From NCBI RefSeq assembly GCF_006345805.1, contig NW_021826336.1, positions 1 to 13,134 on the forward strand: a stretch of DNA of 13,134 bases. Direction: 5' to 3'. The translations under genes were made by a program, and so were the position numbers. Shown here in pieces: positions 2,682-13,068 of this stretch (the first letter of the stretch is position 1; every line of letters begins with the position of its first letter). The notes under the pieces were generated by a model that worked only from the letters and a program-made list of their open reading frames with translations, did no database searches and had not been told where the DNA came from. This DNA comes from Octopus sinensis (lineage: Eukaryota).

Positions 2682-2809
2682 TACCAACCACATGGTTCTG
2701 GGTTCAGTCCCACTGCGTGGCACCTTGGGCAAGTGTCTTCTACTATAGCCTCGGGCCGACCAAAGCCTTGTGAGTGGATTTGGTAGACGGAAACTGAAAG
2801 AAGCCTGTC

Positions 2810-2811
<2 letters not shown>
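2682..2811 (+). mobile_element. SINE family B (OR2-like, CORE-like), 5' half; A-box missing
   Basis: B-box-like ggttcagtccc at 2701-2711. ccttgggcaagtgtctt at 2723-2739 resembles the CORE/MIR motif ccttgggcaagt. The segment aagccttgtgagtggatttggtag...gaaactgaaagaagcc is shared with 5664-5711. Confidence 0.9.
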
Positions 2812-2840
<29 letters not shown>

Positions 2841-3050
2841 CTCTTTTACACTTTTACTTGTTTCAGTCATTTGACTGCGGCCATGCTGGAGTACCGCCTT
2901 TTAGTCGAGTAAATCACCCCCAGGACTTATTCTTTGTAAGCCTAGTACTTATTCTATCGGTCTCTTTTGCCGAACCGCTAATTTACGGGGACTCAACACA
3001 CCAGCATCGGTTGTCAAGCGATGTTGGGGGGACAAACACAGACGCACATA
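2841..3050 (-). mobile_element. SINE family B, 3' half
   Basis: Reverse complement matches 5760-5964 (gtgtttgtcccc...cgatgctggtgtg...cggcaaaagagaccgatagaataagtactaggcttacaaagaataagtcctgggg...catggccgcagtcaaatgactgaaacaagtaaaag). Confidence 0.92.
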
Positions 3051-3180: not shown

Positions 3181-3302
3181 AAGATAGAAAATGGAGAAAT
3201 ACATCTAATCAAATATCAGTTACCAGATAATACTGAATCACATACTTTATTAAACCACCACATAAGAGACTGTAGGGTTAAATATAAAAGCAGAACAAAT
3301 CA

Positions 3303-3341
3303 GTGTACATAAAGGAATGTACATAAAAAGTGTACATAAAA
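3303..3341. repeat. Three dispersed-tandem copies of (g/t)gtacataaa
   Basis: gtgtacataaagg aatgtacataaaaa gtgtacataaaa. Confidence 0.75.
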
Positions 3342-3413
3342 GATAAAGTTGTATAATAAGTAGAATATATAAAAGAGAATATAAATATAAGTAAATATAA
3401 ATATAAGTATAGA

Positions 3414-3551
3414 TTACATCTTACAGCTGTTTCGGCCATGTAGATAAGTATGTCTCATTTTACCAATATTAGCCCTTTATGGTTGGTCAATATATAGATA
3501 TAAATGAGACATTTACAAAAATATCATATGGCCTCTTCGGAGATTATGTAA
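3414..3551 (-). ncRNA. Type I hammerhead ribozyme-like motif with U4C core variant, long helix II and palindromic helix III
   Basis: The minus strand reads AUCU-CCGAAGA-GGCCAU...AUGGCC-GAAAC-AGCU-GUA-AGAU. Helix I is AUCU/AGAU with a UUAC/GUAA extension. Helix II is 6 bp with an internal 11-bp stem (3450-3460/3502-3512). The NUH triplet is GUA. Confidence 0.72.
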
Positions 3552-3643
3552 TATAACTCAGTCTACATATATACCCACATGGGTGTGGGTGCATACCCAC
3601 AATACAACATAGACATATGGGTGCATATACTCACACTCTTATA

Positions 3644-3810
3644 CTGGTGTGTTTACCTCCCCGTCACTTAGCGTTTCGGCAAGAGAGACCGATAGAATGA
3701 GTACTAGGCTTACAAAGAATAAGTCCTGGGGTCGATTTGCTCGACTAAAGGCGGTGCTCCAGCATGGCCGCATTTGAATGACTGAAACAAATAAATGAAT
3801 AAAAGAAAAA
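3644..3810 (+). mobile_element. SINE family B, 3' portion
   Basis: ctggtgtgtttac...cggcaagagagaccgatagaatgagtactaggcttacaaagaataagtcctggggtcgatttgctcgactaaaggcggtgctccagcatggccgc...tgactgaaacaa; highly similar to 5800-5960. Confidence 0.92.
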
Positions 3811-4332
3811 TGTATACGTAAAATATGGTGTAATTATAAACAGTGCAAATTTATATATATATCTTTATACTTCTACCTTTACGGTGCTTTATTTGACTGG
3901 CGAAAAGTTCCTTGTGAGCCTAATTTCTCAGCGAAGCTAAAGGCATACTATTAGTTTTATTGTTATTAAGGTGAAGCTAACATGGCTGAAGCGAAGTGTT
4001 GTTACGCATGCTGGAGCACTCGTTTCACCAGTCAGCATATTTTAAATGGAAAACATAAGACAAGAAAGAAAAATGATACGGTGAAATGGATGTAGCATAC
4101 TCTTCTGATAATGGTTACAAACATAGCTACAAGCTCTGCATATTTTGGTGGACGGTTGCAGGCGGTCGGCTTCAGTATATGACCATGCTTATTTTACCTC
4201 GCTTTTGGTTCTCAATCTTTGGTAAGGTCATACTGGAGAGATCGTGGTAAACACCGTGTCCTGAGCATCGAAACCCGACAAAAGCTATTCCGGTCGAGGC
4301 TTATTCTGTTATTTAAAAAAAAACATTTTACC

Positions 4333-4529
4333 TGTATCAGTCATTTGGTTTTGGGCATGTTGGTGCACTACCTTGAAAGGTTTTAGTCGAACAAATCGAC
4401 CCAAGGACTTAATTTTTTAAAGCCTAGTACTTATTCTATAAGTCTCTTTTGTCGAAGCGCCAAGTTACGGGAATGTATGCACACCAACACCGGTTGTGAA
4501 GTGATTATAGGGGTGGGCCCACACACATA
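4333..4529 (-). mobile_element. SINE family B, diverged 3' half
   Basis: cagtcattt...ttagtcgaacaaatcgaccc...aagcctagtacttattctat...ctcttttgtcgaa...agttacggg...caccaacaccggttgt aligns to 2850-3030. Confidence 0.85.
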
Positions 4530-4760
4530 CTTTTATTCTTTTATTTGTTTCAGTCATTTAACTGTGGCCATGATGGAGCACTGCCTTGAGGGGATTTTAA
4601 TCGAACAAATCGACCCCAGGACCTATTATATTATTAAGCGTAGTAATTATTCAATCAGCTCCTTTTGCTGAACCGTTAAGTTACGGGGACGTAAACACAC
4701 CAGCACCGGTTGTCACGTGGTGATAGGGGACAAACGCAGACACAAAGACACAGACACATA
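4530..4760 (-). mobile_element. SINE family B, diverged 3' half, in tandem with the previous copy
   Basis: ttgtttcagtcatttaactgtggccatgatggagcac...atcgaacaaatcgaccccagg...aagttacggggacgtaaacacaccagcaccggttgtca...gggacaaacgcagacac. Confidence 0.88.
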
Positions 4761-4780
4761 AATATATACATATTTATATA

Positions 4781-4838
4781 TAATTAATAATACCAGGGTA
4801 ATAAACATTTTAGAAATTTCTACTACCAGTGGCCTAGC
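4781..4838 (+). repeat. 58-bp direct repeat, copy 1 (partner 5183-5240)
   Basis: Ungapped manual alignment gives 51/58 identities at an offset of 402 bp. Confidence 0.9.
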
Positions 4839-5663: not shown

Positions 5664-5964
5664 AAGCCTTGTGAGTGGATTTGGTAGTCGGAAACTGAAA
5701 GAAGCCCGTCGTATATATGTACATGTATATATATATATATATGTGTGTGTTTGTATGTCTGTGTTTGCCCTCCCACCCCAAGGTCACTTGACAAACGATG
5801 CTGGTGTGTTTATGTCCCCGTAACTTAGCGATTCGGCAAAAGAGACCGATAGAATAAGTAGTAGGCTTACAAAGAATAAGTCCTGGGGTCGATTTGCTCG
5901 ACTAGAACGTGGTGCTCCAACATGGCCGCAGTCAAATGACTGAAACAAGTAAAAGAGTAAAATA
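5664..5964 (+). mobile_element. SINE family B, 5'-truncated but co-linear (middle, internal TA/GT microsatellite, 3' half)
   Basis: aagccttgtgagtggatttggtag...gaagcccgtcg-(TA/GT)n-tctgtgtttgccc...gactgaaacaagtaaaagagtaaaa. Shows the normal order and orientation of the two halves. Confidence 0.93.
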
Positions 5965-5994
5965 GTATATTCGAACGAGGAAACGACTGATTTT

Positions 5995-6161: not shown

Positions 6162-6376
6162 TAATGGTTTCAGATTTTGGCACAAGGCTAGCAATTTCGA
6201 GGGAGGGTATAAATCGATTACGGTGACACCAATGTTTAACTGGTACTTACTTTCTTGACCCCCGAGAGGTTGAAAGGCAAAGTCGACCTCATCGAAATTT
6301 GAACTCAGAACGTGCAGGCGGACGAAATGCCGCTAAGTATTTCGCCCGGTGTACTAACGATTTTGCCAACTCGCCG
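6162..6376 (-). mobile_element. SINE family A, full length
   Basis: Tail ggtttcagattttggcacaagg, body aactggtactt...gaaaggcaaagtcgacctc, B-box complement at 6294-6304, hairpin at 6319-6348, head ctaacgattttgccaactcgcc. Confidence 0.92.
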
Positions 6377-6409
6377 ATCAACAAATAATACTAATAATAA
6401 CGCTTAGAA

Positions 6410-6531
6410 CAAGATGATGATGACGATAACGACGACGACGACGATGATGATAATGATGTCTCTGACGGTAACAAAGACGACGAAGACGTTGACGATGACA
6501 ACAACAACGATGATGACGATACGACGACGAC

Positions 6532-6568
<37 letters not shown>

Positions 6569-6687
6569 TTGGTAGTGGTGGTGTCGGTGGTGGTAGTGGC
6601 GTCGGTGCTGCTACTACTGCTGCAGCTGCTGCTGCTGATGATGACGGTGAGGACGACGAAGACGATGATAACAACGATGATGATGAA

Positions 6688-6720
<33 letters not shown>

Positions 6721-6746
6721 GACGATGATGATGTTGATGATGAAGA
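6410..6746. repeat. Compound trinucleotide repeat (GAT/GAC/AAC/GGT/GCT)
   Basis: Directly visible; explains the poly-Ser (minus) and poly-Met (plus) ORFs. Confidence 0.95.
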
Positions 6747-6959
6747 TTGCAGAAATTGCAAGCCATTTATTACTAATGTCACGTAATTACAGCCGACCAT
6801 TACCACTTAACGACCTCTATTGCCGAGATGATCACCACTCACACAATTATATTCTACAACTCATAAAAAATGCACAGCAACCTTATCATTTATTGCCCTA
6901 AATATGTTGTTTTAGTTTAGTATAGGTGTGTTTCATGTGCAACAGTGCAATACTCAATT

Positions 6960-8044: not shown

Positions 8045-8108
<64 letters not shown>

Positions 8109-8160
8109 CATCATCATTATTATTATTATTAATATAATGTTGTTGTTGTTGTCGTTGTTC
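8045..8160. repeat. (ATT)n/(ATC)n/(GTT)n microsatellite
   Basis: Directly visible; gives the poly-Ile in ORF 7872..8117. Confidence 0.97.
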
Positions 8161-10149: not shown

Positions 10150-10442
10150 ATAAAATTTTGAATGGTACAACAATGCACTATAATACAAATAGTGGGCTAT
10201 ATACCTGTTGTAATTTAGTCATCCATAGTATGATAATATTTCGAAATGAAATTCCTTCTTCAGATATTCTTAGATGGAGTCGCTTGTGGGAAAACCGATT
10301 ATAGCAGCGACTCCATCCAAGAATATATGAAGAAGGAATTTTATTTCGAAATATTATCATACTATGGATGACTAAATTACAATAGATATATAGCCTACTA
10401 TTTGTATTATAGTGCATTGCTTTACAATTCAAAACATTTTAT
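10150..10442. mobile_element. Foldback/MITE-like element: ~135-bp inverted arms with a 21-nt spacer
   Basis: Arms 10156-10284 and 10306-10434 have 9 mismatches in 129 ungapped positions by manual alignment. The ORFs at 10122(+) and 10178(-) translate to near-identical peptides. The inverted repeat is certain; the MITE label is inference. Confidence 0.75.
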
Positions 10443-12665: not shown

Positions 12666-12865
12666 TTTTCTACTCTAGGCACAAGACCCGAAATTTTTGG
12701 GGAGGGTGGGGCCAGTCGATTAGATCGACCCCAGTACGCAACTGGTACTTAATCTATCGACCCCAAAACGATGAAAGACAAAGTCGACCTCGGCGGAATT
12801 TGAACTCAGAACACGAAGACAGAAGAGATACCACTAAGCATTCCGCCTGACGTGCTAACGTTTCT
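12666..12865 (-). mobile_element. SINE family A copy lacking the extreme 5' head
   Basis: Tail ctaggcacaagacccgaaattttt, body tcgattagatcgacccc...aactggtact...aaagtcgacctcggcg, B-box complement at 12795-12805; ends at cgtgctaacgtttct. Confidence 0.92.
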
Positions 12866-13068
12866 TATTTCTTTACTCTCCACAAGGGGCTACACACAGA
12901 GAGGACGAACAAGGACAGACAAACGGATTAAGTCGATTATATCGACCCCAATGCGTAACTGGTAATTATTTAATCGACCCCGAAAGGATGAAAGGCAAAG
13001 TCAACCTCGCCGGAATTTGAACTCTAAGCATTTCCCCTGGCGTGCTAACGAGTCTGCCAGCTCGCCGT
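12861..13068 (-). mobile_element. SINE family A variant with a different 3' tail and an internal deletion
   Basis: Tail tttcttatttctttactctccacaaggggctacacacagagaggacgaacaaggacagac differs from the other copies. B-box complement at 13012-13022 is directly followed by taagcatttc (hairpin arm deleted). Head is ctaacgagtctgccagctcgccg. Confidence 0.9.

What the first reader, a model, noticed from the sequence alone, without database searches (positions are those of the whole stretch)
3414..3551. Hammerhead ribozyme with a non-canonical C4 core, ~100-nt helix II and self-complementary helix III
Seen: the minus strand folds into a complete type I HHR topology. It has helix I AUCU/AGAU, core CCGAAGA, helix II GGCCAU/AUGGCC enclosing an 11-bp stem (3450-3460/3502-3512) and a 5-bp stem (3462-3466/3483-3487), then GAAAC-AGCU-GUA. 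Predicted cleavage is after the GUA, between plus coordinates 3422 and 3421. Known: the canonical core is CUGANGA...GAAA...NUH, and HHRs with a 2-bp helix III and palindromic loop (newt satellite 2, ASBVd plus strand, Penelope-like element pLTR HHRs) can cleave as dimers. ACAGCUGU is an 8-nt self-complementary sequence that fits this model. Inference: this is a remnant of a Penelope-like pLTR or retrozyme family carrying a U4C core variant and an unusually long helix II.
Basis: partly seen in the sequence, partly recalled or inferred. Interest (0 to 1): 0.85.

Follow-up and report, generated by a model that had tools for sequence, protein, structure and literature searches.

The report
Degenerate hammerhead ribozyme motif, octopod DNA
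A single, ORF-less copy of a hammerhead self-cleaving RNA motif with one essential core base changed sits in repeat-rich cephalopod DNA; it is most likely a decayed leftover of a Penelope-type retroelement and is not known to be active.

Summary
That includes the core CCGAAGA...GAAA...GUA, the G10.1-C11.1 pair, a 6-bp helix II closing a 100-nt arm, the palindrome ACAGCUGU, and the cleavage site at 3422|3421.

It is unlikely to be chance within this window. None of 8000 simulated windows reached the observed quality. Of 120 composition-matched decoy cores tested in the real window, only the true hammerhead arrangement hit. Across a 2-3 Gb genome, a few such motifs could still arise by chance.

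The window has no Penelope ORF, no second copy and no tandem repeat, and I found no homologue in any searchable collection. Family membership, covariation and the family's consensus base at position 4 are therefore untested. Both strands fold equally well into a rod, and the hammerhead fold is about 4 kcal/mol above the minimum. U4C is a known activity-lowering natural variant.

An octopod relative (Argonauta hians) does carry a Penelope element with a CUGAAGA...GAAA hammerhead in both pLTRs, next to (TA)n. Rfam misses that hammerhead too.

Verdict: probably a decayed single copy of a known kind of motif. Interest is low to moderate.

The parts
3548..3552 (-). Distal part of helix I, 5' strand (AUUAC). 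It is separated from the proximal part by the bulge AUA 3547-3545.
   Evidence: The hammerhead-constrained fold pairs it with GUAAU 3417-3413. In the unconstrained fold, AUUACAU 3552-3546 pairs with AUGUAAU 3419-3413 instead.
3541..3544 (-). Helix I proximal 5' strand, AUCU
   Evidence: 4 Watson-Crick pairs with AGAU 3421-3418
3534..3540 (-). Core strand 1, CCGAAGA (C3 C4 G5 A6 A7 G8 A9). Position 4 is C, not the canonical U.
   Evidence: Sequence read. It is the only C.GA.GA site in the window that satisfies the descriptor.
3528..3533 (-). Helix II base, 5' strand GGCCAU (G10.1 first)
   Evidence: 6 Watson-Crick pairs with AUGGCC 3439-3434. Kept in the minimum-energy and centroid folds.
3440..3527 (-). 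88-nt interior of the helix II arm. It holds the 11-bp stem 3512-3502/3460-3450, and 5 further complementary pairs at 3487-3483/3466-3462.
   Evidence: Pairs verified. The 11-bp stem is present in the minimum-energy fold of both strands.
3434..3439 (-). Helix II base, 3' strand AUGGCC (C11.1 last)
3430..3433 (-). Core strand 2, G12 A13 A14 A15.1
3423..3430 (-). ACAGCUGU: helix III (A15.1-U16.1, C15.2-G16.2) plus the loop AGCU. It is an 8-nt palindrome that could form an intermolecular helix III in a dimer.
   Evidence: Palindrome read directly. The self-duplex is -11.1 kcal/mol and forms in a cofold of a trimmed construct.
3422..3422 (-). A17. The predicted scissile bond is 3' of it, between 3422 and 3421.
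   Evidence: Follows from hammerhead numbering applied to the GUA triplet 3424-3422. Not tested experimentally.
3413..3421 (-). Helix I 3' strand: AGAU 3421-3418 (proximal) and GUAAU 3417-3413 (distal)

Best explanation
This is one degenerate genomic copy of a metazoan type-I hammerhead ribozyme motif. It is the kind carried by Penelope-like retroelements and their non-autonomous derivatives, stranded in AT- and microsatellite-rich intergenic DNA of an octopod-like cephalopod.

If the minus strand is transcribed, the RNA would mostly adopt a rod-like hairpin. The hammerhead three-way junction is a minor conformer. Its 2-bp helix III would need pairing of two copies through ACAGCUGU to be stable. 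The U4-to-C change in the uridine turn would cut the rate further.

The most likely state is therefore an inactive or barely active relic with no function at this locus.

Shown: the motif, its pairings, its non-random nature, and the presence of Penelope hammerheads in an octopod genome. Inferred: descent from such an element, and loss of activity.
For: - All listed bases and pairs are present.
- 12 of 13 core positions match, as do G10.1-C11.1, the 2-bp helix III and the palindromic tetraloop. This is the canonical metazoan type-I architecture described in PMC4209133.
- Chance expectation is 0.014 per window for a loose descriptor with position 4 free. At the observed quality there were 0 hits in 1500 and 0 in 8000 simulated windows.
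- Only the true core order among 120 decoy permutations hits in the real window.
- The window is octopod-like.
- An Argonauta hians Penelope element has RT and GIY-YIG ORFs and 94%-identical pLTRs. Both pLTRs carry an identical CUGAAGA...GAAA-CGCG-UU hammerhead, followed by (TA)n.
- Penelope elements are numerous in Octopus (PMC13282606). They are often 5'-truncated or rearranged and favour microsatellite targets (PMC8557442).
- The hammerhead-compatible fold is only 4.2 kcal/mol above the minimum-energy fold.
- Rfam's silence is uninformative, because Rfam also misses the bona fide Argonauta pLTR hammerhead at E<=1.
Against:
- The window has no Penelope ORF, no pLTR partner and no tandem repeat.
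- A 100-nt helix II is not a feature of described Penelope or retrozyme hammerheads, which have 4-8 bp.
- All pairs are Watson-Crick, and the plus strand folds as well as the minus strand (z -2.7 against -2.5). Nothing therefore points to selection at the RNA level.
- The hammerhead conformer is about 2e-4 of the computed ensemble.
- T-to-C creating a CpG is the less favoured direction of change in a methylated genome (my own reasoning).
Confidence: 0.55

Rival explanations
1. It is a chance resemblance. An imperfect ~140-bp DNA palindrome in AT-rich repeat DNA happens to carry hammerhead-like core letters in one internal loop. There is no ribozyme ancestry.
For: - Both strands fold into the same rod with similar z-scores. 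Helices I and II are therefore explained by a DNA-level inverted repeat.
- The essential U4 is missing.
- No Rfam hit and no homologues.
- Relaxed descriptors do give chance hits: 0.11-0.64 per window when any one core mismatch and 3-4 bp helices are allowed.
- The same window holds a second, clearly weak canonical-core hit at 10263-10232.
- At an extrapolated 1e-6 to 1e-5 per window, a 2-3 Gb genome would still hold up to a few chance examples of this quality.
Against: - At the observed quality there were 0 hits in 8000 simulated windows.
- 0 of 119 decoy core permutations hit in the real window, even with a relaxed scaffold.
- Features the search did not require also match metazoan hammerheads: G10.1-C11.1, C15.2-G16.2 and the palindromic tetraloop.
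- Outside (TA)n, real sequence inflates scaffold counts only about 2-fold over the Markov model.
Confidence: 0.25
2. It is a functional member of an undescribed cephalopod hammerhead family. The family's native form would have C at position 4 and a long, structured helix II, and it would cleave as a dimer through ACAGCUGU.
For: - Helix II, its 11-bp inner stem and helix I are all perfect, whereas a decaying copy would be expected to carry mismatches.
- The U4C variant retains enough activity in vivo for viroid infectivity (PMC3088659).
- The palindrome gives a -11.1 kcal/mol intermolecular helix III.
- A CpG at C4-G5 would decay towards U4, so a C4 that is still present is not obviously old damage (my own reasoning).
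Against: - There is only one copy, no partner within 13 kb for dimer formation, and no tandem array.
- There are no homologues and no covariation.
- No loop-loop tertiary contact is possible in the usual way with a 100-nt helix II.
- The rod fold is favoured.
- U4 changes considerably decrease activity in vitro.
Confidence: 0.1
3. It is a small foldback or MITE-like DNA element, or a hairpin-RNA precursor. Its arms form helices I and II, and the hammerhead-like letters are incidental to the element.
For: - Symmetric folding of both strands; outer 7-bp inverted repeat ATTACAT/ATGTAAT at 3413-3419/3546-3552.
- The window holds another, much clearer foldback at 10156-10284/10306-10434.
Against: - The terminal inverted repeat is only 7 bp, and there is no clear target-site duplication.
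- There is no second copy in the window.
- The large internal loops are unlike a miRNA precursor.
- It does not explain the core letters.
Confidence: 0.1

Closest known systems
Canonical metazoan type-I hammerheads (newt satellite 2, Schistosoma, non-LTR retrozymes; PMC4209133, PMC7229834)
   Same: - Type-I topology.
- Core CNGANGA...GAAA...UH, with G10.1-C11.1.
- Helix III of 1-2 bp capped by a palindromic tetraloop, which implies dimer-dependent cleavage.
   Different: - C instead of U at position 4.
- Helix II arm of 100 nt instead of about 4 bp plus a loop, so the usual loop 1-loop 2 contact is not available.
- Not in a 170-400 bp tandem repeat.
Penelope-like element pLTR hammerheads (min-HHR; PMC4209133), including the Argonauta hians example found here (L004 14137-14176 and 19352-19391)
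   Same: - Short helix I and a 6-bp base of helix II.
- Small palindromic helix III.
- N7 = A, as in the Argonauta copy.
- Neighbourhood of (TA)n and other microsatellites.
- Octopod genome context.
   Different: - No RT/GIY-YIG ORF, no pLTR pair and no second copy in the window.
[quoted passage not shown]
- No sequence similarity to the Argonauta pLTR outside the core.
- Helix II carries an 88-nt interior.
Natural U4C hammerhead variant of a viroid (cited in PMC3088659, its ref. 30)
   Same: The same single core substitution occurring in nature.
   Different: That variant sits in an otherwise compact hammerhead with tertiary contacts, in a replicating RNA under selection. Here there is no evidence of selection or activity.

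Membership tests
Hammerhead ribozyme (type I) | Three helices around a junction, with the open end at helix I | tested here: met
   Can be drawn with all Watson-Crick pairs. It is 4.2 kcal/mol above the minimum-energy rod and about 2e-4 of the ensemble.
Hammerhead ribozyme (type I) | Conserved core C3 U4 G5 A6 N7 G8 A9 / G12 A13 A14 / A15.1-U16.1 / H17 | tested here: not met
   12 of 13 positions are met; position 4 is C. U4C is a known natural variant with reduced activity.
Hammerhead ribozyme (type I) | G10.1-C11.1 pair at the base of helix II | tested here: met
   G3533-C3434
Hammerhead ribozyme (type I) | Match to Rfam hammerhead covariance models | tested here: not met
   No hit at gathering score in the window, nor at E<=10 in 3350-3620. 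The control is equally negative: Rfam at E<=1 also misses the bona fide Argonauta pLTR hammerhead. The test therefore has little power.
Hammerhead ribozyme (type I) | Covariation and conservation of helices and core among homologues | not testable with these tools
   No eukaryotic genome collection is on hand. Searches of the metagenome, viral and protein collections gave only chance hits or none.
Hammerhead ribozyme (type I) | Site-specific self-cleavage 3' of H17 | not testable with these tools
   Needs a bench assay.
Penelope-like element pLTR hammerhead | Lies in one of two flanking repeats of an RT plus GIY-YIG ORF | tested here: not met
   The window has no such ORF or domain and no repeat of the 3190-3640 region. 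A 5'-truncated fragment cannot be excluded.
Penelope-like element pLTR hammerhead | [quoted passage not shown] | tested here: inconclusive
   Met: helix I of 4 bp (plus 5 bp after a bulge), a 6-bp base of helix II, and a palindromic helix III. Not met: the extra nucleotide, and an 88-nt interior in helix II.
Metazoan non-LTR retrozyme | Type-I hammerhead in tandem repeats of about 170-400 bp | tested here: not met
   TRF and the repeat search find only microsatellites and short AT-rich arrays near the motif. There is one motif in 13 kb.

The most novel reading that the evidence does not exclude
Cephalopod genomes hold a family of type-I hammerheads whose native core has C at position 4. Their helix II is a ~100-nt structured arm. 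They self-cleave as dimers through an 8-nt palindromic helix III, and this locus is one intact member.
Probability: 0.08. Interest if true: 0.55.

Novelty: new member of a known kind. Interest (0 to 1): 0.25.

Why it matters
If it is a relic, it only adds cephalopods to the long list of animals whose genomes are littered with Penelope- or retrozyme-type hammerheads. That is useful for repeat annotation but not surprising.

It would matter more if genome-wide copies showed that C4 and the long helix II are conserved. That would mean a natural hammerhead tolerates a change in the uridine turn and dispenses with the usual loop-loop contact. It would also give a test case for dimer-dependent regulation.

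One practical point came out of the work. Rfam models miss a genuine octopod pLTR hammerhead. Descriptor searches are therefore needed for this class of motif, and they must be controlled for chance.

Tried and rejected
- Rfam at gathering score on the whole window, and at E<=10 on 3350-3620. No hammerhead hit. This was later shown to be uninformative.
- Exact-pattern scans for the 3' half. The one metagenome hit lies in a bacterial coding region at 45% GC with no 5' core, so it is chance. The two viral 16-mer hits were not pursued, as that number is within chance for a pattern that short.
- Exact look-ups of two window ORFs. Not on record.
- phmmer of the 58-aa open frame across the 3' half against 1.84 billion representatives. 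0 hits.
- Idea that the motif is the 3' part of the neighbouring SINE. Rejected: homology among the five SINE copies ends near 3644.
- Idea that the window holds a decayed Penelope ORF. Pfam found nothing in the ten most complex open segments.
- Sampling Penelope loci through the Argonauta RT fragment. This gave loci from an unidentified ENA assembly (ERZ25072999) with no octopod SINE and no similarity to the candidate.
- A second long-helix-II motif in the Argonauta element (L004 14363-14462). Rejected as chance: it is absent from the other pLTR, has z = +0.4, and the minimum-energy fold does not support it.
- Alternative reading of the core as C3 U4 plus a CC insertion. Rejected because it destroys helix I.

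Full report
**What is there**

On the minus strand the sequence reads:

5'-AUUAC AUA AUCU CCGAAGA GGCCAU [88 nt] AUGGCC GAAA C AGCU G U A AGAU GUAAU-3'

- Helix I is 3544-3541/3421-3418, 4 bp.
- Helix II is 3533-3528/3439-3434, 6 bp, beginning with G10.1-C11.1.
- An inner stem at 3512-3502/3460-3450 is a perfect 11 bp.
- A further 5 pairs lie at 3487-3483/3466-3462.
- Helix III is A15.1-U16.1 plus C-G around the loop AGCU.
- The triplet is GUA, with the predicted cut between 3422 and 3421.
- ACAGCUGU (3430-3423) is a perfect palindrome.
- The only departure from the hammerhead core is C at position 4 (3539).
- Helix I can be extended by AUUAC/GUAAU after a 3-nt bulge.

**Is it more than chance?**

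I wrote a descriptor search. In the window it finds this site and nothing else when position 4 is left free. With the canonical core it finds nothing.

In Markov-1 simulations of the window:
- the loose form (H1>=4, H2>=4, G-U allowed, position 4 free) occurs 0.014 times per window;
- allowing any one mismatch in CUGANGA gives 0.11 per window, and 0.64 per window with 3-bp helices;
- at the observed helix II quality there were 0 hits in 1500 windows.

A larger run of 8000 windows used Watson-Crick pairs and a short helix III. It gave 3 hits at H2>=4/H1>=3 and none at H2>=6/H1>=4. Extrapolating gives about 1e-6 to 1e-5 per window.

Real DNA is richer in inverted repeats than a Markov chain, so I checked that too. 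The window has about 230 times more bare scaffolds than the simulations, but I attribute this excess (by inference, not by a direct test) to the window's long (TA)n tracts. The other eukaryotic loci show only about a 2-fold excess.

A decoy test in the real window is the cleanest control. Among 120 composition-matched permutations of the two core strands, only the true hammerhead order fits even a relaxed scaffold.

The motif is therefore not a chance event at the scale of one window. At the scale of a 2-3 Gb genome, up to a few such chance motifs are expected. The answer thus depends on how many windows the scan read.

**Folding**

The unconstrained fold of the minus strand is a rod (-31.7 kcal/mol, z = -2.5). 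It keeps helix II and the 11-bp stem but closes with AUUACAU/AUGUAAU, a register that competes with helix I.

The plus strand folds just as well (-34.5 kcal/mol, z = -2.7). All pairs are Watson-Crick, so nothing marks the RNA strand.

Forcing the hammerhead junction costs 4.2 kcal/mol, and it makes up about 2e-4 of the ensemble. Nearest-neighbour energies ignore the tertiary core, so this does not exclude the hammerhead fold.

The palindrome gives a -11.1 kcal/mol intermolecular helix III, which forms in a cofold of a trimmed construct. That is consistent with the dimer model.

**Context**

The window is eukaryotic, 33% GC, and full of microsatellites.

It holds at least five copies of a SINE-like repeat. 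Two inverted copies (about 2836-3040 plus strand, and about 3795-3644 minus strand) flank the motif.

SINE homology stops near 3644, so the motif is not part of the SINE.

There is no second copy of 3190-3640, no tandem array beyond short AT-rich repeats (3302-3341, 3356-3409), and no long ORF near the motif.

Pfam finds nothing in the ten most complex open segments.

A SINE-derived ORF hits one protein, from Argonauta hians. Window 2714-2810 is 93% identical to that locus. The source is therefore an octopod or a close relative.

**A useful comparison**

The 20-kb Argonauta locus (L004) happens to hold a complete Penelope-like element.
- Its direct repeats at 13981-14250 and 19196-19465 are 94% identical and 5215 bp apart.
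- ORFs with RT-like and GIY-YIG-like sequence motifs (read by eye) lie at 16202-17645; relatives of the 16695-17117 segment carry PF26215 and sit beside called genes with RVT_1 and weak GIY-YIG Pfam hits.
- Both repeats carry the identical motif CUCUAC-CUGAAGA-UUUUUAAUAAA-GAAA-CGCG-UU-GUAGAG. This is followed by about 65 nt and then (TA)n.

This shows that octopod Penelope elements carry hammerheads with N7 = A and a palindromic mini helix III. That agrees with the literature (PMC4209133; PMC8557442; PMC13282606).

Rfam at E<=1 does not detect this genuine motif either. The negative Rfam result for the window therefore carries little weight.

Beyond the core letters, the candidate shares no sequence with this element or with three other Penelope loci.

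**Search for relatives**

No eukaryotic genome collection was available.
- Exact scans for the 3' half found one bacterial coding-region hit (chance) and two 16-mer viral hits that were not inspected and are within the number expected by chance.
- Exact ORF look-ups found nothing.
- An exhaustive phmmer search with the open frame across the motif found nothing.

The decisive test, copies and their consensus, could therefore not be run.

**Interpretation**

The best reading (about 0.55) is a decayed, isolated copy of a Penelope- or retrozyme-type hammerhead. It is probably inactive, for these reasons:
- U4C considerably lowers activity, although a viroid variant with it remains viable (PMC3088659);
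- helix III is too short for a monomer;
- there is no partner copy nearby;
- the long helix II removes the usual tertiary contact;
- even canonical Penelope hammerheads cleave poorly in vitro.

The rivals are:
- chance within a DNA palindrome (about 0.25);
- a foldback or MITE-like element with incidental core letters (about 0.1);
- a functional new variant family with C4 and a long helix II (about 0.1).

The perfection of all helices and the surviving CpG at C4-G5 sit slightly awkwardly with simple decay, and they keep the last reading alive.

**Verdict**

This is a new member of a known kind, with unproven ancestry and doubtful activity. Interest is about 0.25. The C4 core itself is not novel.

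Noticed in passing
window 2836-3040 (+), 3644-3795 (-), 4310-4505 (+), 4524-4790 (+), 5723-5975 (-); related pieces near 2217-2356, 6214-6362, 12716-12981: Multiple copies of a SINE-like repeat (core ...TTTCAGTCATTTGACTGCGGCCATGCTGGAGCACCGCC...), often followed by ACAT/TA microsatellites. Two inverted copies bracket the hammerhead region. One part (2714-2810) is 93% identical to Argonauta hians DNA.
   Followed up: partly
window 10156-10284 / 10306-10434: A 129-nt inverted repeat, 93% complementary, with a 21-nt spacer. It looks like a foldback or MITE-like element. One arm carries a weak canonical-core hammerhead-like hit on the minus strand (10263-10232: UAU-CUGAAGA-A-GGAAU..AUUUC-GAAA...UC-AUA). 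Helix I is only 3 bp, and the other arm reads AUGAGGA, so the hit is at chance level.
   Followed up: partly
window 6400-6750: Long GAT/GAC/TGA trinucleotide arrays that give open frames rich in Asp, Ser or Met on several frames. This is low-complexity DNA, not an evident gene.
   Followed up: no
window 8045-8135: An almost perfect (TTA)30 array, 95% matches.
   Followed up: no
L004 13981-19465 (Argonauta hians, GCA_054771915.1 BAAFZT010000006.1): A full Penelope-like element with 94%-identical pLTRs. Both pLTRs hold an identical minimal hammerhead (14137-14176, 19352-19391). RT and GIY-YIG ORF fragments are interrupted by stops. There are internal 189-, 354- and 357-bp tandem repeats, and (TA)n at the pLTR ends. 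Rfam does not detect its hammerhead.
   Followed up: partly
L005-L007 (ENA assembly ERZ25072999, contigs of 0.5-2.5 Mb): A 'metagenome' assembly with long eukaryotic contigs. They carry Penelope-like RT/GIY-YIG genes, LTR-retrotransposon genes and ankyrin-repeat genes. The organism is not identified, and no octopod SINE was seen in 60 kb.
   Followed up: no
window 3302-3341 and 3356-3409: Short tandem arrays (13-nt unit x3, 16-nt unit x3.4) directly downstream of the predicted cleavage site on the minus strand. Their origin is unknown.
   Followed up: no
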